Below the pieces are notes generated by a model. The model was not told the DNA's origin and did no database searches. It saw nothing but the letters and a program-made list of their open reading frames with translations. DNA of 64,000 nucleotides from Macrostomum lignano (lineage: Eukaryota), in NCBI GenBank assembly GCA_002269645.1, contig NIVC01003217.1, forward strand, positions 1-64,000, in the 5' to 3' direction. Positions 52,001 to 64,000 of the stretch are shown here, piece after piece; position 1 is the stretch's first letter; every line of letters starts with the position of its first letter. The translations under genes and the position numbers were made by a program.

Positions 52001-54633
52001 GACGAGCCTCGGGATCAGCAAAATCCTCAGGCTAAGCAGCGGCAGCGCAGGTCGCTGGCCATGTCCGTTGATAAGTGGATTCGAGTCCGGTCCGACCGAG
52101 AGTCGCTGCGCTGCCTACTGCAGCTGCGTTTGAAGCTCAGCGCCCTGCTGCTCAGGCGGATCCGGCATCCGGCTAAGCTGCTCAGCTTTCAAGACGAAGC
52201 CGTGCTCAAAGCTCTAGTCAATGTGCTCACCTACGAGGAGCAGGCGCTCGGCCTCCGCCAGCCGGCCGGGGTTGGCGCCAAACCGCGCCAGATTGGCGCC
52301 GCCGATTCTTTGTTCCGGCCGCCGCCGGAGCTGGCGCCATCAGAAGAGGAAGACGGAGGATCCAATATGGCTGCCGCCGCTGCTGCAGTCTGCGTTGATA
52401 AACCAGCCAGTCCGCTGCCGCCGCCGCCACCTCAGCAGCAGCTGCAGCCTCGCCTACAGCAAATGTCGCTGCATCAGCACCAGAAACAGCAGCAGCAGCA
52501 GCAGCAGCAGGGCCAGTACCAGCATCAGCAGCAGGTTTGTGTAAACTGCTTATAAATCTGCATACACTAAATTAAATTTATATCATAAGCCCTGTAGATT
52601 GGTTGACTTAGCTGAGCTATTCTTGACCCACTAGCCTATTATGACCCTAACCCACTGCTATGGGTAGCTTTCCTTGACCCACACCCTGACCCAGTTGCTT
52701 TCCTTGACCCACACCCTGACCCAGCTTTCCTTGACCCACACCCTGACCCAGTTGCTTTCCTTGACCCACACCCTGACCCAGCTTTCCTTGACTCACCCTG
52801 ACCCAGCTTTCCTTGACCCACACCCTGACCCAGCTTTCCTTGACCCACACCCTCACCCAGTTGCTTTTCTTGACCCACACCCTGACCCAGCTTTCCTTGA
52901 CTCACACCCTGACCCAGCTTTCCTTGACCCACTCCCTGACCCAGTAGCTTTCGATGACCCACACCCCGACCCAGTCGTTTTCCTTGACTCATACCCTCAC
53001 CCAGTCGCTTTCCTTGATCCACACCCTGACCCAGTTGCTTTCCTTAACCCACACCCTCACCCAGTAGCTTTCGATGACCCACACCCTGACCCAGTCGCTT
53101 TCCTTGACTCATACCCTGACCCAGCAGCTTTCGATGACCCACACCCTCACCCAGTTGCTTTCCTTGACCCACACCCTCACCCAGTTGCTTTCCTTGACCC
53201 ACACCCTCACCCAGTTGCTTTCCTAGACCCACACCCTCACCCAGTTGCTTTCCTTGACCCACACCCTCACCCAGTTGCTTTCCTTGACCCACACCCTCAC
53301 CCAGTTGCTTTCCTTGACCCACACCCTCACCCAATTGCTTTCCTTGACCCACACCCTCACCCAGTTGCTTTCCTTGACCCACACCCTCACCCAGTTGCTT
53401 TCCTTGACCCACACCCTCACCCAGTTGCTTTCCTTGACCCACACCCTCACCCAATTGCTTTCCTTGACCCACACCCTCACCCAGTTGCTTTCCTTGACCC
53501 ACACCCTGACTTTTAAGCCTCTAATTGAACTGTTGAATTCACGGCCCCTTCCACTTTCACTGCAGGCGCCAAGGAAGCGCTATTTCCTACTGCCAGTAGG
53601 CAGTGCCAGCCTGTGGTCGCAGGCTCAAACTCACTGCACTCTTCCTGTACAGCCCGCTCTCGAGCGTCGCTTATCTGGCGCTCTACGCGATGCCACATCA
53701 AACTCCGTCGCCAACGCGTCGTCCTCAATGATGACTGGCGGCGGCGGCAGCGGCGGCGGCGGCAATGGTGTCTACCTCCTGCTGCTGCACACCAGACCTC
53801 GGCCAGCTGTCCCAGACGAGGACGGAGCCGCAGCCGCCAGCAGTTCGGCCTCCTCGTCTCTCCTAGGCGTGGCTCGACTAAGAAGCGTCCAAGTTGGCCA
53901 AGACGGCGGCTGTCGGGTCAGCTTCGACTGGATTCAGCGTCATCAGCAGTATCAGCATCACGAGTCCCAGCAGCAGCAGCCGTCGGCTCCTGTCGCTGAC
54001 TGCGACCTCTCTAGCGAAGCTCGAGGAGCCGAGACTGGTACAGGTATTGAACTGCCAATACCCGAGGCTGAACGGCTTCTAACTCTCTTCTGTACTAGTA
54101 ATAGTAGTACTGCTGCTAATGCTAGTAATATTACTACTAGTAGTACTACTGCTAGCTCGACCATTGGCTCCGCTTCTACCGGCTCAAGGCAGCAGCAACA
54201 GCCTCAACAACAACAATTATCTTCCTCGCGATTTGTTTCTCACCTGTCTCCATCGTTGCTTAGCAACCTTTATCAACAGCAGCAGCAGCAGCAGCAGCAA
54301 CAACAACTGAAGCAGCAGCCTGTGTGGCTGCAGACTGCTTCTGGCCAGCCGTTGCTGCTTACGGCTCCTGCTGCAGCCGCTCTTCTTCAACAGCAACAGC
54401 AACAGCAGCAGCAGCAGCATCAGCAGCAGCAATACCACGATGCCAAACTGTTTCTGGCAGCTGCCGCAGCCAATCTTCAGATGCGGGCTATGCAGCAGCC
54501 GCAGCAGCAGCAGCAGCCACTTCTTCCACCTCAGCAGCAACAGCAGCAGCAGAACGCGTTGACTTCTGCTATCGCGGCGGCTTTGCAGCAGCAGCAGCAG
54601 CAACAACAGCAACAGCAGAATCGGTTCTCCTAG
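43015..54633 (+). CDS. YTHDC2: YTHDC2-like 3'-5' RNA helicase (R3H, DExH core, ankyrin insert, HA2/OB, degenerate YTH, polyQ tail), 9 exons
   Basis: Exons 43015..43449, 44227..44373, 44684..45163, 46056..46667, 47119..47301, 47410..47919, 48816..49301, 51530..52534, 53566..54633. R3H EEVRIAVAIAL...FPSSFTTNERAYVH. Helicase motifs GDPGTGKTTQ, QPRR, DEIH, LHSQ, ATNIAETSLT and QRRGRCGR. Ankyrin GATALMVGAGRG. DLTELG, FSVDTYSDH, DVRDLNTNSENWAVVKAAL and LPSDWLIY. Confidence 0.93.
43590..43930. repeat. Minisatellite, ~41-bp unit ACACAGGTACAAGCACTAGAGACAGGCAGATCGACCTACTG (YTHDC2 intron 1)
   Basis: Direct reading. Confidence 0.9.
46705..46965. repeat. Minisatellite, ~29-bp unit TTCTTCCGAGGTCCTTTTTTCTGAAAACT (intron 4)
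   Basis: Direct reading. Confidence 0.9.
47920..48745. repeat. Pyrimidine-rich minisatellite, 22-bp unit CTACTCTTGTTCTATCTCTACC (intron 6)
   Basis: Direct reading; begins within the donor site. Confidence 0.95.
49310..51470. repeat. Minisatellite, 27-bp unit GGGTCATTGTAGGTTTGGGTCATGTTT (intron 7)
   Basis: Direct reading; ~2.1 kb. Confidence 0.96.
52615..53512. repeat. Minisatellite, ~30-bp unit CCAGTTGCTTTCCTTGACCCACACCCTCAC (intron 8)
   Basis: Direct reading. Confidence 0.95.
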
Positions 54634-55804: not shown

Positions 55805-56685
55805 GGTAGACTCGGACACAGATAGATGAGGTAGACTCGGACACAGATAGATGAGGTAGACTCGGACACAGATAGATGAGGTAGACTAGGACACAGATAG
55901 ATGAGGTAGACTAGGACACAAAGATAGATGATGTAGACTAGGACACGGATAGATGAGGTAGACTAGGACACAAAGATAGATGATGTAGACTAGGACACGG
56001 ATAGATGAGGTAGACTCGGACACAGATAGATGAGGTAGACTCGGACACAGATAGATGAGGTAGACTCGGACACAGATAGATAAGGTAGACTAGGACACAG
56101 ATAGATGAGGTAGACTAGGACACAGATAGATGAGGTAGACTCGGACACAGATAGATGAGGTAGACTAGGACACAGATAGATGAGGTAGACTAGGACACAG
56201 ATAGATGAGGTAGACTAGGACACAAAGATAGATGATGTAGACTAGGACACAGATAGATGAGGTAGACTCGGACACAGATAGATGAGGTAGACTAGGACAC
56301 AGATAGATGAGGTAGACTAGGACACAGATAGATGAGGTAGACTCGGACACAGATAGATGAGGTAGACTCGGACACAGATAGATGAGGTAGACTCGGACAC
56401 AGATAGATGAGGTAGACTAGGACACAGGTAGATGAGGTAGACTCGGACACAGATAGATGAGGTAGACTCGGACACAGATAGATGAGGTAGACTAGGACAC
56501 AGGTAGATGAGGTAGACTCGGACACAGATAGATGAGGTAGACTAGGACACAGGTAGATGAGGTAGACTAGGACACATATGAGGTAGACTAGGAAACAGAT
56601 AGATGAGGTAGACTAGGACACATATAAGTTAGACTAAGACACATATGAGGTAGACTAAGACACATATGAGGTAGACTAGGACACA
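55805..56685. repeat. Minisatellite, 25-bp unit GTAGACTCGGACACAGATAGATGAG
   Basis: Direct reading; intergenic. Confidence 0.96.
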
Positions 56686-57245
56686 GAAACTAAAGCATTG
56701 TCAGCTGCAATAGCGGTGATTTACATTACAGCTACGAGTATACAAGCACCTAATTTGCATGCATATTATTAGGCACTTTGAGGCGCATTACCTCTATAGA
56801 AATTAATTGCACGTGTCCTCACCTCACAGCACCAACTTTCGCATTTTGTGCCATTCGCTGTTCCGTTTTTCAGTCTGAACTACATGTTGCCACTTGTAGT
56901 GTACAGTCGTGCGCGTTGCAGCTATTTATAGTAGTATGCATGCACACTGAATATATGTAAATCTCTCTCTACACGGGGCGTCACTCTGCATAGCATGTAG
57001 CCATATAATAGGAAAATGCCAGCGAAATGATTAGCTGTACTGTAACATGCGGCTGGTGTTTTATGCAGATTTCTAAATGAGCATTGGTTAAATATTGCCG
57101 CAGGTGATAAGGTGGGGGAGAGAGTCAAGTCTATACAGATAAGGGCGAGTTTTTTGCTAAGCCAAGCGCTAGTTTTTGGTCGAAAACAGCACGATCCAAC
57201 CTGAGCAGTGGAGCCATTCTGCAGTACACGTAAGACGCTGCTGAC

Positions 57246-60200
57246 ATGACAGACCCGTTTCTGCTCGATCAAGCAGCACTGGAGGCCCGACTCACGGCTC
57301 TCCAGGAGACATTCGAGCGTTGGAGAGAGATTAGAGATTGTCGAGATGTCGCCGAATTTGTTGCCAAAGCGGATGAGTTCAATTGGTTGCTGGGTGAGTC
57401 ACTGATTGTTTAGAATGTTAGCTTCACCACTGCTTAGTGTAGATTCACCACTGCTTAGTGTAGATTCACCACTGTTTAGTGTAGATTCACCACTGTTTAG
57501 TGTAGATTCACCACTGTTTAGTGTAGATTCACCACTGTTTAATGTAGATTCACCACTGTTTAGTGTAGATTCACCACTGTTTAGTGTAGATTCACCACTG
57601 TTTAGTGTAGATTCACCACTGTTTAGTGTAGATTCACCACTGTTTAGTGTAGATTCACCACTGTTTAGTGTAGATTCACCACTGTTTAGTGTAGATTCAC
57701 CACTGTTTAGTGTAGATTCACCACTGTTTAGTGTAGATTCACCACTGTTTAGTGTAGATTCACCACTGTTTAGTGTAGATTCACCACTGTTTAGTGTAGA
57801 TTCACCACTGTTTAGTGTAGATTCACCACTGTTTAGTGTAGATTCACCACTGTTTAGTGTAGATTCACCACTGTTTAGTGTAGATTCACCACTGTTTAGT
57901 GTAGATTCACCACTGTTTAGTGTAGATTCACCACTGTTTAGTGTAGATTCACCACTGTTTAGTGTAGATTCACCACTGTTTAGTGTAGATTCACCACTGT
58001 TTAGTGTAGACTCACCACTGTTTAGTGTAGATTCACCACTGTTTAGTGTAGATTCACAATTTTTTAGTGTAGATTTACCACTGCTTGTATACTATACCAT
58101 CATTCACCAGCAGTTCACCATCATTCACCAGCAATTAACAATCATTCACCAGCCATTCAACGTCATTCACCAGCCATTCACCATCATTCACCAGCAATTC
58201 ACCATCATTCACCAGCCATTCACCATCATTCACCAGCAATTCACCATCATTCACCAGCAATTCACCATCATTCACCAGCAATTAACAATCATTCACCAGC
58301 CATTCAACGTCATTCACCAGCCATTCACCATCATTCACCAGCAATTCACCATCATTCACCAGCCATTCACCATCATTCACCAGCAATTCACCATCATTCA
58401 CCAGCAATTCACCATCATTCACCAGCAGTTCACCATCATTCACCAGCAATTCACCATCATTCATCAGCCATTCACCGTCATTCACCAGCCATTCACCATC
58501 ATTCACTAGCCATTCACCATCATTCACCAGCCATTCACCATCATTCACCAGCAGTTCACCATCATTCACCAGCAATTCACCATCATTCACCAGCAATTAA
58601 CAATCATTCACCAGCCATTCACCATCATTCACCAGCCATTCACCATCATTCACCAGCCATTCACCATCATTCACTAGCCATTCACCATCATTCACCAGCC
58701 ATTCACCATCATTCACCAGCCATTCACTGTCATTCACCAGCCATTCACCATCATTCACCAGCTATTCACCATCATTCACCAGCAATTCACCATCATTTAC
58801 CAGCCATTCACCATCATTCACTAGCCATTCACCATCATTCACCAGCTATTCACCATCATTCACCAGCAATCCACCATCATTCACCAGCCATTCACCAGCC
58901 ATTCACCATCATTTACCTGCCATTCACCATCATTCACTAGCCATTCACCATCATTCACCAGCCATTCACCATCATTCACCAGCCATTCACCATCATTCAC
59001 TAGCCATTCACCATCATTTACCAGCCATTCACCATCATTCACCAGCAATTCACCATCATTCATCAGCCATTCACCGTCATTCACCAGCCATTCACCATCA
59101 TTCACCAGCAATTCACCATCATTCACCAGCCATTCACCATCATTCACCAGCAATTCACCATCATTCACCAGCAATTAACAATCATTCACCAGCCATTCAC
59201 CATCATTCACCAGCCATTTACCATCATTCACCAGCAATTCTCCATCATTCACCATCATTCACCATCATTCACCAGCCATTCACCATCATTCACCAGCCAT
59301 TCACCATCATTCACCAGCCATTCACCGTCATTCACCAGCTATTCACCATCATTCACCAGCAATTCTCCATCATTCACCAGCAATTAACAATCATTCACCA
59401 GCCATTCACCATCATTCACCAGCCATTCCCCATCATTCACCAGCCATTCACCATCATTCACCATCATTCACCATCATTCACCAGCCATTCACCATCATTC
59501 ACCAGCCATTCACTATCATTCACCAGCCATTCACCGTCATTCACCAGCTATTCACCATCATTCACCAGCAATTAACAATCATTCACCAGCAATTAACAAT
59601 CATTCACCAGCCATTCACCATCATTCACTAGCCATTCACCATTATTCACCAGCCATTCACCATCATTCACCAGCCATTCACCATCATTCACCATCATTCA
59701 CCATCATTCACCAGCCATTCACCATCATTCACCAGCCATTCACTGTCATTCACTAGCCATTCACCAGTGATTCACGTCTCCAATCAATCGCCAATTCACC
59801 TGTTAACCGTTTCCCCCCCCCAAACGCCGCAGTGGAAATTTCCCAGGGCATTAAGAACGCCGGCTGGGATCTGGACGATCTGGAGGAGACGCTCAAAATG
59901 ATGTCGGAGAGCCGGCAGCTGTCAATCAGCGAAGCCGATCACCGGAACCGGCGCCAGTTCATCGAGAACGCGCGCCAATTGCTGAGCCAAATCAGCGCCG
60001 AGACTTTCCCAGCGCCGCAGGGATCGTTGCCGATCAATTCGACCACTAATCAGTTGCCGGCCGACGCTGAACTGCTCACTAGCGGCGGTGTGGCCACTGT
60101 GGGTCGGCTGCACAGCCATCCGCATCATTACGTCGAGGAGCCGGCTAGCTTGGACCTGCTGGATCCCGGAGACGCATCGTACAGTAGCGGCGGCGGCGGC

Positions 60201-60425
60201 GTTAGTCGATGGAAACGACGCCTTGGACAGCTTGGCGCCGTCAAAGGCTGCTGCTGTTTCGCAACGCGACTTCGAGCGCGGATCTTCTTGGCGGCGCTGC
60301 TGGCGGCGCTGCTGCTGCTGCTGATTGTCGGCATCGCCACGGCTGTCGGCAGGAGCCGCGGCGGAGATGAAGGCAACAATGGCACAACGCTGGAAGCTTC
60401 CAGTCCGACAACGGCCGGTACTTAA
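57246..60425 (+). CDS. Syntaxin-6/10 N-terminal (Habc)-like TM protein lacking a SNARE motif, paralog A (246 aa; exons 57246..57393, 59833..60425)
   Basis: MTDPF...LQETFERWREI...FNWLL-V-EISQGIKNAGWDLDDLEETL...RRQFIENARQLL matches the STX6 pattern EDPF...LFQRW...IEWDLEDLDETI...RKAFI. A low-complexity linker, GCCCF, a TM segment and a ~25-aa tail follow. The phase-1 GT-AG intron joins in frame. Confidence 0.8.
57420..59765. repeat. Two abutting 21-bp minisatellites: TTCACCACTGTTTAGTGTAGA (57420..58080) and TTCACCAGCCATTCACCATCA (58090..59765)
   Basis: Direct reading; together they fill the 2.4-kb intron of paralog A. Confidence 0.97.
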
Positions 60426-60574
60426 AATTGCATATTGAGTTCGGCTGAGCAAGCGGCTGGCTACTAATTGCCTTCCTATATATGTACTTTAAGCATGTAC
60501 TTTAGTGAAGTATTATTAGTTTTTGAAGAGTCTGGACCGTTCGTTTTGGCTCGGCCTCAGGCAAGCCATTGATT

Positions 60575-60890
60575 TTAGCGCCTCAACCCCCACTGGAAGG
60601 TAATTGGCGTCTCTATTAACCCCTTATCCACAGGCAGGAATTTTGGGCCTCAACCTCTCACTGCAGGTAATTGGGGCTCAACCCCCCCCCCCTACTGGCA
60701 GGTTATTAGAGCCTCAACCCCCCCCCCCACTGGCAGGCAATTGGGGCCTGCCTCAACACCTCACTGCAGGCAATTGGGGCCTCAACCCTCCCCCCCCACT
60801 AGCAGGTAATTTGGGCTCAACCCCTCACTGCAGGTAATTGGGGCCCCAACCCCCCCCCCCTACTGGCAGGTAATTGGGGCCTCAACCCAC
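60575..60890. repeat. ~40-bp degenerate repeat GGCAGGTAATTGGGGCCTCAACCCCCCCCCCCACT
   Basis: Direct reading. Confidence 0.85.
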
Positions 60891-61344
60891 ATTCTCGCGA
60901 ATTTTGAGCAAAGTATTTATTCTTGTCAAATTTCAATAAGCGAGACTTTCATATTTATTGTTAGCTTCCAACCAGCTAAACGAGCATTAGAAATGAAATT
61001 ATACCTTTCACTTGCTCCTTGCTCTACGCTGCTGAAAAATCATACTTATGATGCCGATTTGTTCTGAAATCAGGCTGAGGCTGTCTTCTTTTGCATTCCA
61101 AACCAACACTTTTTATTTGTAAACTGAACAGAAAATGTCAATCGCGCCTATTAATGGTTGAGTGCGCTGCGTTGAAAACATTTTTCCCATTTTTAGTGGA
61201 AGATTTGCGGCTTCCTACTCTTAGTAGAACAAATATATTTCGCTATAACAAGTTGTGGTGCATATTATTATGTAAATCTGCGAAATTCCAGTAAATTCAT
61301 CTCATTTTCTTTAAACAGTTACTTAGTATATTATCACTGTTGGC

Positions 61345-61633
61345 CACTCAGTCATTGAGAATCTGCCTCTCCGCTCACTCAGTCATTGAGAATCTGCCTC
61401 TCCGCTCACTCAGTCATTGAGAATCTGCCTCTCCGCTCACTCAATCATTGAGAATCTGCCTCTCCGCTCACTCAATCATTGAGAATCTGCCTCTCCGCTC
61501 ACTCAGTCATTGAGAATCTGCCTCTCCGCTCACTCAGTCATTGAGAATCTGCCTCTCCGCTCACTCAGTCATTGAGAATCTGCCTCTCCGCTCACTCAGT
61601 CATTGAGAATCTGCCTCTCCGCTCACTCAGTCA
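61345..61633. repeat. Minisatellite, 31-bp unit CACTCAGTCATTGAGAATCTGCCTCTCCGCT (~9 copies)
   Basis: Period 31 checked at 61345/61376. Confidence 0.97.
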
Positions 61634-62079
61634 TCTGCATCTTAACTGTTCCAATCGATAGCTAGAAGTACATTTATGTGTCAAAAAGTACAGAAGTCAT
61701 ACAGTACCAGGCCGAAAAGCTTGCATACACAGGAAGTGCATTGGTTTACTTAAAATAACGCAAATCCAAGTCAATGCTTCACAGTTTAAAGCTTCCTGTG
61801 CTTTCAACAACTGTTCTTTTCGATCTAATTGAACAGGAAATTTTATTGACGAGCAACACAAATATAAAAATTAATACCCCAATTTCACTATTCGAAACTG
61901 GCAAAATGTATTTCATTTATTGTGAGAATGATATTGAGACTTTATGTACGAGTACTTAATTATGCAAGCAAATATGGAGATCACACATATTAGCCTTGTT
62001 GAACTTCTGACAGATGGGCCAAAATGTGAGTGCCATAGCTGCTATCCAGTGCGATTTTAACACTCGTAACAGAAAGACC

Positions 62080-62855
62080 CCTGACACCGCATTCACCAAC
62101 TTCTGACCGCATCATTCACCAACTCATGACACCGCATTCACACACTCATGACACCGCATTCACCCAACTTCTGACAGCATCATTCACCAACTCATGACAC
62201 CGCATTCACACACTCCTGACACCGCATTCACCAACTTCTGACCGCATCATTCACCAACTCATGACACCGCATTCACACACTCCTGACACCGCATTCACCA
62301 ACTTCTGACAGCATCATTCACCAACTCATGACACCGCATTCACCAACTTCTAACAGCAGCATTCACCAACTCATGACACCGCATTCACCAACTCCTGAGA
62401 CCGCATTCACCAACTTCTGACAGCATCATTCACCAACTCATGACACCGCATTCACCAACTCCTGACACCGCATTCACCAACTTCTGACAGCATCATTCAC
62501 CAACTCATGACACCGCATTCACCAACTTCTAGCAGCACCATTCACCAACTCATGACACCGCATTCACCAACTTCTGACAGCACCATTCACCAACTCATGA
62601 CACCCTATTCACAAACCCCTCACAGCATCATTCACCAACTCATGACACCCCAGATTTCACCAACCTCTGACACCAGCATTCAGCAACCTCTGACAACACC
62701 ATTCATCAACCTCGGACATCACCATTCACCACCCTTTGACACCGCATTCACCAACTTCTGACACCCCATTTACCAACCTGTGATACCACTATTCACCAAC
62801 TTCTGACACCCCATTTACCAACCTGTGAAACCACTATTCACCAACTCCAGACACC
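62080..62855. repeat. Minisatellite, ~22-bp unit TGACACCGCATTCACCAACTTC
   Basis: Direct reading. Confidence 0.93.
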
Positions 62856-62961
62856 CTAAAGCATAATGATATTGACAATGTACATTATAAAGTTAATCAA
62901 CTATGACGTCATCAGTATATTAGCAACTGATTAATTAATTAATTAATTAGCATCGTCGCAA

Positions 62962-63578
62962 TCAGCACCACCAATGAGTCCAGTCTGGGGCGCAGGTCGG
63001 CCTCTCTGTGGGGGCCTCAGTGGAGGCGGCGGTGTGTTTCGCTGCCAGGACCACCACCGTGATGAAGACAATCAGGCACACAATGGCCAGCATGCCCAGC
63101 AGGTAGCGGTACCGGTACACCCAGCCTGCCCAGTCCCGGTTGTGAAATCGCATGCGTTCCAAGTCGCGCAGGCTGTCAATCTCGACAGTCGGGAATGTCA
63201 GCGAGCCGCTCGAGTTTGAAGAGTTCGAACTCTTGCGCCACGACATCAAAGGAACCGCAGCTGCTGTTCCGGCTGCTCCATTGCCGTCAGTTCTCGATCG
63301 GGTCTTGCCAGACTCCAGGTCGATCTCTTCATCTCCATCCTCGATTCCTTCATCGTCTGGCTCCGTAGCTTCGTTATTCGACGGCGTAGTGGTTGCCATG
63401 GCAACCTCCCTAGCAACCTCGTCAATGAAGCTGCGAACTCTGACTAAGAAAGCCGATCGATTGTCCCTGCTGGACGCTGATGCCAGGGCTGGCGAATTGG
63501 CTTTGAGCATGAGGCTCAGCGTCTCCTGCAGGTCATCGATTTCCCAGCCGATCGAGCGGACTGAGGTGGACAGCTCAT
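62962..63578 (-). CDS. Syntaxin-6 Habc-like TM protein lacking a SNARE motif, paralog B, last exon (first exon beyond window)
   Basis: Acceptor with branch GCTAAC and pyrimidine tract at 63579..63610. Translation D-ELSTSVRSIGWEIDDLQETLSLM...RSAFLVRVRSFIDEV, acidic linker, TM LLGMLAIVCLIVFITVVVLAA and tail ending CAPDWTHWWC. Same phase-1 intron position as paralog A. Confidence 0.8.
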
Positions 63579-63689
63579 CTGAGTCGATGAGGTGGGGGGA
63601 GGTTAGCAGCTAAATTGTTCCCCTTGGCAACCGAATTGGCCCAACATGAATTAACATGGCGCAATCGGAACTAAATTTGGTTTCCTAGC

Positions 63690-64000
63690 GACTAACTTTG
63701 GGCCCTAGCAACGAAGTTTTCCCCTTAGCAACCAAATTTCCCACCCTAGCAACCAAATTTTCTCTGCCCTAGCAACCAAGTCTTTTCTTCCCTAGCAACC
63801 GAGATTTCCCCTAAAAACCCTTTTTTTCTGCACTAGTATCCGAGTCTTCTCTGCCCTAGCAACGAGATTTCCCCTAACAACTAACTTTCCTCTGACCTAG
63901 CAACCAAGTTTTTTCTTCCCTAGCAACCGAGATTTCCCCTAACAACTAACTTTCCTCTTCCCTAGCAACAAAGTTTTCTCTTCCCTAGCAACCGAGATTT
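63690..64000. repeat. Minisatellite with CCCTAGCAACC(A/G)AG core in the intron of paralog B
   Basis: Direct reading; runs off the window end. Confidence 0.9.

What the first reader, a model, noticed from the sequence alone, without database searches (positions are those of the whole stretch)
57246..63578. Convergent pair of syntaxin-6-like genes that kept Habc + TM but have no SNARE motif (candidate decoy or tether-adaptor syntaxins)
Seen: both genes encode a recognisable STX6/STX10/Tlg1 N-terminal helical bundle (DPF; W-[DE]-[LI]-D-D-L-x-E-T-L; R-x-x-F) with a phase-1 intron at the same position. Each then runs in one uninterrupted exon through a low-complexity linker with no heptad pattern into a TM helix and a 25-27 aa luminal tail (A: NGT sequon and juxtamembrane CCC; B: C-x8-C). 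There is no room for the ~60-aa SNARE helix. The paralogs are strongly diverged yet both open, which suggests long-term selection. Known: the STX6 Habc binds the GARP/EARP subunit Vps51, and canonical syntaxins are tail-anchored with almost no luminal part. Inference: these are fusion-incompetent membrane anchors that recruit or titrate GARP/EARP, possibly a lineage-specific trafficking module.
Basis: partly seen in the sequence, partly recalled or inferred. Interest (0 to 1): 0.72.

Follow-up and report, generated by a model that had tools for sequence, protein, structure and literature searches.

The report
Flatworm syntaxin-6-like membrane proteins without SNARE motif
Two neighbouring genes of the flatworm Macrostomum lignano encode proteins that keep the front domain and membrane anchor of the fusion protein syntaxin 6 but have lost the part that drives fusion. 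They belong to a small, undescribed flatworm family that probably marks or regulates membranes rather than fusing them.

Summary
The window is Macrostomum lignano DNA. Gene A (57246-60425, +) and gene B (62962-63578 plus an exon beyond the window, -) match the transcript-derived GenBank models BOX15_Mlig029776g1 (246 aa) and BOX15_Mlig003251g1 (258 aa).

Both have a confident syntaxin-6-type three-helix bundle, a roughly 90-100 aa disordered linker, one transmembrane helix and a 25-26 aa tail. No SNARE motif was found by Pfam, a local SNARE HMM run without filters, profile-profile comparison, or a six-frame scan of the intergenic DNA.

Two details need correcting. B's "DPF" exon lies outside the window. 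The linkers are long enough for a SNARE helix; they simply are not one.

A and B belong to a Macrostomum clade of at least five SNARE-less paralog groups. Four were checked and share a phase-1 intron that Lingula and Nematostella syntaxin 6 lack. Only the bundle is conserved.

The same architecture arose separately in Emiliania huxleyi and related plankton sequences.

Function is inferred. The best guess is a membrane-anchored docking or address domain for partners of the syntaxin-6 N-domain (Vps51 of GARP/EARP, Vps13B), in the way phytolongins are non-SNARE derivatives of VAMP7. I did not test GARP binding and did not find a canonical M. lignano syntaxin 6.

The parts
57246..57393 (+). Gene A exon 1: Met1 to the first base of codon 50 (helix Ha and the start of Hb of the syntaxin-6-type bundle)
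   Evidence: Translation. In-frame stop 15 nt upstream. Identical to GenBank model BOX15_Mlig029776g1.
57394..59832 (+). Gene A intron, phase 1, GT..AG. Almost wholly two minisatellites: 57419-58083 (21 bp x 32) and 58096-59775 (21/42 bp x 80).
   Evidence: The intron is 2439 bp here and 3017 bp in the second genomic copy, while the exons are identical.
59833..60425 (+). Gene A exon 2, including the TAA stop. It encodes the rest of the Habc bundle (to about 59999), the disordered linker, the CCC, the TM helix and the 26-aa tail with the NGT sequon.
60063..60077 (+). D127-A-E-L-L131 in the linker of A. It matches the DXXLL sorting-signal consensus. D-V-E-L-L occurs in two other paralog groups.
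   Evidence: The function is inferred only.
60276..60344 (+). Gene A transmembrane helix (residues 198-220), with net +3 charge in the 15 residues before it and 0 after it
   Evidence: Hydropathy. AF2 helix 191-225 with pLDDT about 96.
60426..62961 (.). Intergenic DNA between the two converging 3' ends. It carries four minisatellite arrays and no SNARE-coding potential.
   Evidence: arrays. (six-frame Pfam scan, no SNARE hit at E<=10).
62962..63578 (-). Gene B exon 2, including the TGA stop. It encodes the end of helix Hb, Hc, the linker, the TM helix (63040-63111) and the 25-aa tail with C-x8-C.
63579..64000 (-). 3' part of gene B's phase-1 intron (691 bp in the sister copy, repeat-rich). Exon 1 (MDDPF...) lies beyond the window end.

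Best explanation
A and B are two expressed, intact members of a Macrostomum-specific family of at least five paralog groups derived from the Qc-SNARE syntaxin 6.

Each protein keeps the cytosolic N-terminal three-helix (Habc) bundle and a C-terminal membrane anchor, N-terminus in the cytosol. The region that should be the SNARE motif is a disordered, fast-evolving linker. The proteins therefore cannot take part in SNARE zippering or membrane fusion.

Selection acts on the Habc bundle and on having an anchor. The most likely job is to display a syntaxin-6-type N-domain on a membrane of the TGN/endosomal system. There it would act as a docking or address site for factors that bind this domain in canonical Stx6: the Vps51 N-terminus of GARP/EARP, and Vps13B. 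It could either mark carriers for tethering without fusing them or compete with the real syntaxin 6.

What is shown: gene structure, domain content, absence of a SNARE motif, family membership, the pattern of conservation, and that the models come from an RNA-seq-based annotation.

What is inferred: topology, location, binding partners, and whether the effect is recruiting or titrating.
For: Gene models:
- Exact identity to NCBI proteins of M. lignano.
- That annotation was built from RNA-seq assemblies (StringTie/TACO/TransDecoder; PMC5730564).
- The locus record shows products of only 246 and 258 aa.

Habc domain:
- Pfam and PDB sequence matches.
- AF2 models with pLDDT above 90 over residues 1-110 (A) and 1-116 (B).
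- Best structural matches to Stx6 4j2c_A (TM-score 0.85) and Stx10 4dnd (0.90).
- All ten columns invariant across 30 syntaxin-6-family sequences are kept: DPF, W26, E44, W61, L66, E68, T69, R89.

No SNARE motif:
- Pfam at E<=10 gives nothing for A, B and three other paralogs, while control P0007 scores 7e-8.
- A local SNARE HMM run with --max gives negative scores, below shuffled controls.
- hhalign aligns only the N-domain (99.5% probability).
- Linker pLDDT is below 50.
- There is no SNARE exon in the intergenic DNA.

Family:
- An exhaustive HMMER search finds three more SNARE-less M. lignano groups as the closest relatives.
- They are each other's best BLAST hits, at 34-44% identity.
- They form a clade with 94% bootstrap.
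- Four groups share one phase-1 intron position, which is absent from Lingula and Nematostella syntaxin 6.

Constraint:
- The N-domain is 34-44% identical between paralogs, while the linkers do not align.
- Recent copies give dN/dS of 0.10 and 0.42.

Mechanistic precedent:
- In mammalian cells the Stx6 N-domain, not the SNARE motif, carries the targeting information by binding Vps51 and Vps13B (PMC6453939).
- Vps51 binds a conserved Habc groove (PMC10094427).
Against: - No binding, localisation or phenotype data exist. The gene names appear in no paper or searched supplement.
- I could not check the Vps51-contact residues one by one, because the structure paper is not held.
- In yeast the Tlg1-Vps51 contact is dispensable for GARP function (PMC10094427). 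Titrating it might therefore do little.
- The dN/dS estimates rest on 4 and 21 substitutions. The value of 0.42 is only borderline different from 1.
So I cannot say whether these proteins supplement or replace it.
- The Macrostomum clade sits on long branches in a 101-column NJ tree.
Confidence: 0.55

Rival explanations
1. The proteins have a new function unrelated to GARP/EARP. The Habc bundle has been re-used as a generic helical interaction module, or the S/T/P-rich luminal tail carries the function. One example would be a role in a flatworm-specific secretory organelle. The syntaxin-6 ancestry would then say little about present partners.
For: - The N-domains are only about 25-32% identical to canonical syntaxin 6.
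- The family has expanded to at least five diverged groups, which is more than a single conserved partner would seem to need.
- Tails differ widely in length and content, from 1 to 41 aa.
Against: - The family-invariant residues, which a review says form the conserved Vps51 groove, are all retained.
- The tails are not conserved between paralogs, so they are unlikely to carry the common function.
Confidence: 0.3
2. The genes are decaying duplicates. They would be non-functional leftovers of syntaxin-6 copies in a genome with large-scale duplication, still open by chance.
For: - The M. lignano assembly is highly redundant (PMC5730564).
- The linker and tail evolve freely.
- One recent pair has dN/dS of 0.42, with most changes in the linker and tail.
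Against: - Five groups that are only 34-44% identical all keep open frames of about 220-270 codons, all invariant Habc residues and a TM helix.
- Conservation is strongly domain-specific.
- The models come from an RNA-seq-based annotation.
- An unrelated lineage shows the same stable architecture in at least 13 clusters.
Confidence: 0.07
3. This is an annotation artefact. The true mRNAs would contain a further SNARE-coding exon, and the in-frame TM helix would be a coincidence.
For: I did not inspect the RNA-seq reads myself.
Against: - The CDS runs unbroken from the Habc domain into a strong TM helix and a stop codon in every paralog.
- The deposited models are RNA-seq-derived, and the longest product on record is the SNARE-less one.
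- A six-frame Pfam scan of the DNA between the genes gives no SNARE hit.
- The genes converge, so each gene's downstream DNA is the other gene.
Confidence: 0.03

Closest known systems
Syntaxin 6 / syntaxin 10 / yeast Tlg1 (Qc-SNAREs of the TGN-endosome system)
   Same: - N-terminal DPF start and a three-helix Habc bundle (Pfam PF09177; TM-score 0.85-0.90 to 4j2c and 4dnd).
- Total length of about 250 aa.
- A single C-terminal TM helix preceded by basic residues and, in A, cysteines.
   Different: - There is no Qc-SNARE motif. The corresponding stretch is disordered.
- A 25-26 aa luminal tail replaces the 0-3 residues of canonical members.
- The gene structure differs: one phase-1 intron that is absent from Lingula and Nematostella syntaxin 6.
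Phytolongins (plant non-SNARE longins derived from VAMP7; PMC2779197, PMC4861013)
   Same: The design logic is the same. The regulatory N-terminal domain and the TM anchor of a SNARE are kept, the SNARE motif is replaced by an unrelated region, and the result is a lineage-specific multi-gene family.
   Different: Phytolongins derive from an R-SNARE and carry a longin fold, not a Q-SNARE Habc bundle. They occur in plants, not animals. There is no sequence relationship.
Non-SNARE splice isoforms of human VAMP7 (PMC3123573, PMC10743575)
   Same: They are SNARE-family products that retain the N-terminal domain without a SNARE motif.
   Different: They arise by alternative splicing of a gene that also makes the full SNARE. 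A and B are separate genes with no SNARE-coding exon.
Uncharacterised SNARE-less STX6_N + TM proteins of Emiliania huxleyi (UniRef A0A7S3S6V9), MMETSP and marine metatranscriptome sequences
   Same: The architecture is identical: Habc, linker, basic/Cys juxtamembrane stretch, TM helix and a low-complexity tail. Pfam shows STX6_N only.
   Different: - Their N-domains are much closer to canonical syntaxin 6.
- They cluster with a SNARE-bearing algal protein rather than with the flatworm clade.
- They carry their own conserved DEILG...GRHR[RK]KK motifs.
- They are most simply read as an independent loss of the SNARE motif.

Membership tests
Pfam PF09177 (Syntaxin 6/10/61 N-terminal domain) proteins | Match to the family HMM above the curated gathering score | tested here: met
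   A scores 56.7 bits against a cut-off of 29.4. B's in-window part covers only half the domain and scores 19.5 bits. Full-length B (P0002) carries a precomputed PF09177 hit.
Pfam PF09177 (Syntaxin 6/10/61 N-terminal domain) proteins | Three-helix antiparallel bundle superimposable on the Stx6/Stx10 crystal structures | tested here: met
   For A, the AF2 model has pLDDT above 90 and Foldseek gives 4j2c_A TM-score 0.85 (rmsd 1.9 A) and 4dnd 0.90. The AF2 model of B shows the same three helices, but I did not run it through Foldseek.
Qc-SNAREs of the syntaxin 6/10/Tlg1 type | A SNARE motif of about 53-60 aa (heptad layers around a central Gln) just before the membrane anchor | tested here: not met
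   Pfam SNARE gives no hit at E<=10, while the control is positive. The local SNARE HMM with --max scores below zero and below shuffled controls. hhalign aligns only the N-domain. The linker is predicted disordered.
Qc-SNAREs of the syntaxin 6/10/Tlg1 type | Single C-terminal transmembrane anchor with a cytosolic N-terminus | tested here: met
   There is one hydrophobic helix near the C-terminus and no N-terminal signal-like segment. Net charge is +3 before the helix and 0 after it. Insertion and orientation were not tested experimentally.
Tail-anchored membrane proteins | Single TM helix so close to the C-terminus that insertion must be post-translational (roughly 30-40 residues or fewer after it; my own knowledge) | tested here: inconclusive
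   The tails are 26 and 25 aa. That is inside the usual limit but far longer than in canonical syntaxins (0-5 aa). The insertion pathway cannot be tested here.
Vps51 (GARP/EARP)-binding Habc domains | Conserved hydrophobic groove that buries the Vps51 di-tyrosine motif | not testable with these tools
   The family-invariant residues are kept. The contact list was unavailable, and no complex prediction or M. lignano Vps51 sequence could be obtained.
Phytolongins / non-SNARE longins | N-terminal longin domain | tested here: not met
   Pfam finds STX6_N only and no longin domain. The resemblance is one of design, not of membership.

The most novel reading that the evidence does not exclude
Syntaxin-6-type N-domains have a selectable function of their own as membrane address or tether-receptor modules. 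Evolution has repeatedly produced 'non-SNARE syntaxin-6-like' membrane proteins: at least once in macrostomid flatworms (at least five paralog groups) and once in haptophyte-type algae. These would be a Q-SNARE counterpart of the plant phytolongins, and they could define or regulate lineage-specific TGN/endosome-derived carriers without fusing them.
Probability: 0.35. Interest if true: 0.65.

Novelty: new variant of a known kind. Interest (0 to 1): 0.5.

Why it matters
SNARE N-terminal domains are usually treated as accessories of the fusion motif. Work with liposomes showed that for Stx6 the N-domain, not the SNARE motif, carries the targeting information (PMC6453939). A natural family that keeps only that domain and the anchor, under constraint and arising in more than one lineage, would be an evolutionary experiment supporting that view.

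It would also extend the 'non-SNARE SNARE relative' idea to a Q-SNARE. In my literature searches that idea turned up only for longin R-SNAREs (phytolongins and VAMP7 isoforms).

M. lignano has working transgenesis (PMC5730564) and, to my knowledge, RNAi. The question can therefore be tested directly in the animal.

Tried and rejected
1. Finding the canonical syntaxin 6 of M. lignano. A profile of 42 canonical sequences returned 1159 hits, but only the best 120 were listed and none was from Macrostomum. Names of the top canonical hits from the exhaustive search pointed to protists, a sponge and unnamed metatranscriptome sequences. The promising GC-rich hit P0023 is an unnamed Logan contig. This question is unresolved.

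2. dN/dS for A and B themselves. The two genomic copies are 100% identical in A. They differ by one base in B exon 2, which leaves the protein unchanged, and by two bases in B exon 1. Non-repeat flanks differ by only about 0.3%. There is no statistical power, so I used recent copies of two sister paralog groups instead.

3. Expression or phenotype data. The gene identifiers appear in no main text and in no held supplement of three M. lignano transcriptome papers.

4. The idea that the acidic '...D-x-E-L-L' stretch is a remnant of the start of the SNARE motif. MAFFT does place it under 'QDEQLE' of canonical proteins. However, the SNARE HMM gives it no score above shuffled sequence and hhalign does not extend there. 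I rejected it as evidence of a remnant and kept it only as a candidate sorting motif.

5. Residue-by-residue check of the Vps51 groove. The structure paper (PMC4788097) is not held.

6. Literature search for SNARE-less syntaxin-6 relatives. I found nothing specific, only VAMP7 isoforms and phytolongins.


Full report
**What is in the sequence**

The region is eukaryotic: GT..AG introns and AT-rich spacers packed with minisatellites.

Gene A
- It starts at ATG 57246, with an in-frame TAA 15 nt upstream.
- Exon 1 ends at 57393.
- A phase-1 intron (57394-59832) consists almost entirely of two minisatellite arrays.
- Exon 2 runs from 59833 to the TAA at 60425, giving 246 aa.

Gene B
- It lies on the minus strand, with exon 2 at 63578-62962, entered in phase 1 after a CAG acceptor.
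- Its first exon is not in the window.

Both introns interrupt the protein 11 codons before the conserved Trp of GW[DE][LI]DDL.

The 246-aa protein is identical to NCBI 'hypothetical protein BOX15_Mlig029776g1 [Macrostomum lignano]'. B's exon 2 is 100% identical to the matching part of BOX15_Mlig003251g1 (258 aa), whose N-terminus reads MDDPFLLDQ....

The window is indistinguishable, in every non-repeat segment tested, from contig NIVC01003217.1 of assembly GCA_002269645.1. A second contig (NIVC01001532.1, about 99.7% identical) carries the same convergent pair behind the same R3H-DEAH helicase gene.

**Are the gene models real?**

The GenBank annotation of this assembly was built from RNA-seq. 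It used genome-guided StringTie/TACO assemblies plus a de novo transcriptome, with ORFs called by TransDecoder (PMC5730564). The two-exon structures therefore reflect assembled transcripts.

The collection keeps the longest product of each gene, and these are the 246- and 258-aa proteins. I did not see the reads myself. No paper or held supplement mentions these gene identifiers.

**Domain content**

A matches Pfam STX6_10_61_N over residues 3-103 (E=3.8e-15, 56.7 bits, cut-off 29.4). The in-window half of B matches the second half of the model (E=0.0015). A matches the crystallised Habc domains of syntaxin 6 (4j2c, 1lvf; E about 8e-9) and syntaxin 10 (4dnd).

| AlphaFold2 feature | A | B |
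|---|---|---|
| Habc bundle, pLDDT above 90 | residues 1-110 | residues 1-116 |
| Linker, pLDDT below 50 | 122-190 | 127-200 |
| Confident TM helix | 191-225 | 201-239 |

Foldseek puts the Stx6 and Stx10 Habc structures first for A (TM-score 0.85-0.90, rmsd 1.4-2.2 A), well ahead of other syntaxin bundles.

In a 30-sequence alignment with canonical animal and protist syntaxin 6, every invariant column is kept by A, B and three further flatworm paralogs. These columns are D3, P4, F5, W26, E44, W61, L66, E68, T69 and R89.

**Absence of a SNARE motif**

I tested this five ways.
1. Pfam at E<=10 reports no SNARE hit for A, B or three other paralogs. A canonical control (P0007) scores 7e-8.
2. A SNARE HMM built locally from 65 canonical hits, run with all filters off on the linkers, gives scores of -0.9 to -2.7 bits. 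Shuffled linkers reach up to 5.7 bits.
3. Profile-profile comparison of the flatworm family with canonical syntaxin 6 aligns only the N-domain (probability 99.5%, E=2.8e-22).
4. The linkers are rich in Gly, Ser, Pro and Ala and are predicted disordered.
5. A six-frame Pfam scan of the DNA between the two stop codons finds no SNARE-coding potential. Because the genes converge, there is nowhere else downstream for such an exon.

The linkers are 92 and 104 aa, long enough in principle.

**Membrane anchor**

Each protein has one strongly hydrophobic helix (A 198-220, B 210-233), no N-terminal signal-like segment, net +3 charge just before the helix and 0 after it. The tails are 26 and 25 aa.

I infer N-terminus-in-cytosol topology from the positive-inside rule. 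Canonical family members in the same search have 0-5 residues after the helix.

The tail lengths are still compatible with tail-anchored insertion (my own knowledge). The CCC in A sits on the cytosolic edge, where canonical syntaxin 6 has its conserved Cys (RRQWCAI). To my recollection, yeast Tlg1 is palmitoylated at that position.

**The wider family**

An exhaustive HMMER search of 1.84 billion cluster representatives with an A+B profile gave 162 hits. The closest are all from M. lignano:
- Mlig022612/Mlig024633 (263-273 aa)
- Mlig015413 g1-g3 (238 aa)
- UniRef A0A1I8HUT2 (222 aa)

A further hit is a frameshifted prediction of A from an older assembly. All three groups have STX6_N only, a TM helix and no SNARE motif.

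The five groups are each other's best BLAST hits, at 34-44% identity in the N-domain against 34% or less to anything else. They form a clade with 94% bootstrap in a neighbour-joining tree of 101 N-domain columns. That tree has long branches and should be read with caution.

All four groups for which I could fetch DNA have the same two-exon structure, with the phase-1 intron at the homologous codon. Syntaxin 6 of Lingula and Nematostella has no intron there. Their introns lie near residues 8, 69, 99, 121, 159, 195 and 224, and near 7, 159, 195 and 226, respectively.

The family therefore looks like one ancient SNARE loss followed by duplication within the macrostomid lineage. No member from another flatworm appeared among the listed hits whose sources I could check.

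**Constraint**

Between A and B, 38 of the first 106 positions are identical. The remainder is at noise level, and BLAST finds nothing after residue 111. The same pattern holds across all five groups.

| Recent copy pair | Synonymous changes | Non-synonymous changes | dN/dS |
|---|---|---|---|
| Mlig015413 g1 vs g2 | 3 | 1 | 0.10 |
| Mlig022612 vs Mlig024633 | 9 | 12 | 0.42 |

Most replacements in the second pair fall in the linker and tail. The numbers are small, and the A and B copies themselves are too similar to be informative.

The stronger argument is that five deeply diverged genes all keep open frames, the invariant Habc residues and an anchor.

**A short linear motif**

In linkers that otherwise do not align, there is an acidic run followed by D-x-E-L-L:
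- A: D127-A-E-L-L131
- Mlig022612: DDGDVELLL
- Mlig015413: DDEDDDVELLI

The multiple alignments place these, plus SLDLL of A and weaker versions in B and A0A1I8HUT2, in one column block.

The motif fits the DXXLL and [DE]XXXL[LI] sorting-signal consensus used for traffic between the TGN and endosomes (my own knowledge). This agrees with a syntaxin-6-like itinerary but is only an inference.

**Most likely mechanism**

In mammalian cells, liposomes carrying Stx6 are targeted through the Stx6 N-domain. That domain recruits Vps51 of GARP/EARP and, together with Stx13, Vps13B. The authors conclude that the targeting information lies in the N-domains rather than in the SNARE motifs (PMC6453939). Vps51 binds a conserved hydrophobic groove of the Habc bundle (PMC10094427).

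A protein made of only that bundle, a flexible tether and an anchor is the minimal form of such an address tag. I therefore rate a membrane-anchored docking site for Habc-binding tethering factors as the best explanation.

It could work as a positive tag or as a competitor of the real syntaxin 6. I cannot say which. In yeast the Tlg1-Vps51 contact is dispensable, which weakens a pure 'titration' model.

**Comparison with what is known**

A and B are members of the PF09177 domain family. They are not Qc-SNAREs, because the defining SNARE motif was tested for and is absent.

The nearest concept is the phytolongins: plant VAMP7 relatives that keep the longin domain and the anchor but have replaced the SNARE motif (PMC2779197, PMC4861013). 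Non-SNARE VAMP7 splice forms are a further parallel (PMC3123573). My literature searches found no description of an equivalent for syntaxin 6 or any other Q-SNARE.

The proteins themselves are already in public databases as uncharacterised 'Syntaxin 6/10/61 N-terminal domain-containing protein'.

**A second lineage**

The same search turned up at least 13 clusters with the same architecture. They come from Emiliania huxleyi (A0A7S3S6V9), MMETSP and marine metatranscriptomes. They carry their own conserved 'DEILG' and 'GRHR[RK]KK-Cys-TM' motifs.

They group with a SNARE-bearing algal protein rather than with the flatworm clade. The architecture therefore appears to have arisen at least twice.

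A Sarcoptes scabiei 'Syntaxin-10' entry also lacks a SNARE hit, but that may be a gene-model error.

**Verdict**

The GARP/EARP part is a reasonable but untested inference.

I rate this as a new variant of a known kind, of moderate interest. Most of that interest lies in the family-level and convergent picture rather than in this one gene pair.

Noticed in passing
Not in the window; proteins P0011, P0013, P0016, P0024, P0026, P0057, P0058, P0071, P0080, P0083, P0108, P0118, P0145: There is a second, apparently independent family of SNARE-less STX6_N + TM proteins in Emiliania huxleyi (UniRef A0A7S3S6V9), MMETSP and marine metatranscriptomes. It has conserved 'DEILG[AG][DE]L' and 'GRHR[RK]KK-Cys' motifs before the TM helix, and A/S/G/P-rich tails of 14-99 aa.
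   Followed up: partly
Not in the window; P0046 = Sarcoptes scabiei KAF7494269.1 'Syntaxin-10': This mite syntaxin-6-like protein (220 aa) has STX6_N and a C-terminal TM helix, but no Pfam SNARE hit at E<=10. It is either a third case of SNARE loss or a gene model missing exons.
   Followed up: no
window 57419-58083 and 58096-59775 (intron of gene A); also 56000-56687, 60659-60888, 61345-61634, 62080-62855, 63702-64000: The locus is saturated with minisatellites (units of 21-67 bp, up to 80 copies). Gene A's intron is 2439 bp here and 3017 bp in the sister contig, while the exons are 100% identical. Intron length is therefore set by array size.
   Followed up: partly
window 60063-60077 (A residues 127-131); also A residues 157-161: D-A-E-L-L in A recurs as D-V-E-L-L after an acidic run in two other paralog groups, within linkers that otherwise do not align. 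It matches the acidic-dileucine (DXXLL / [DE]XXXL[LI]) sorting-signal consensus.
   Followed up: partly
window up to about 54633, + strand (last long ORF 53245-54633): The upstream neighbour is a gene for a protein of about 1640 aa with R3H, DEAD/DEAH helicase, HA2 and OB_NTP_bind domains, according to the precomputed Pfam list. The same neighbour precedes the A/B pair on both genomic copies.
   Followed up: no
UniRef A0A1I8FAQ1 (P0003, 559 aa): An older M. lignano gene prediction named 'Protein kinase domain-containing protein' contains a frameshift-riddled copy of gene A's exon 2. It appears to be an artefact of an earlier, error-prone assembly.
   Followed up: no
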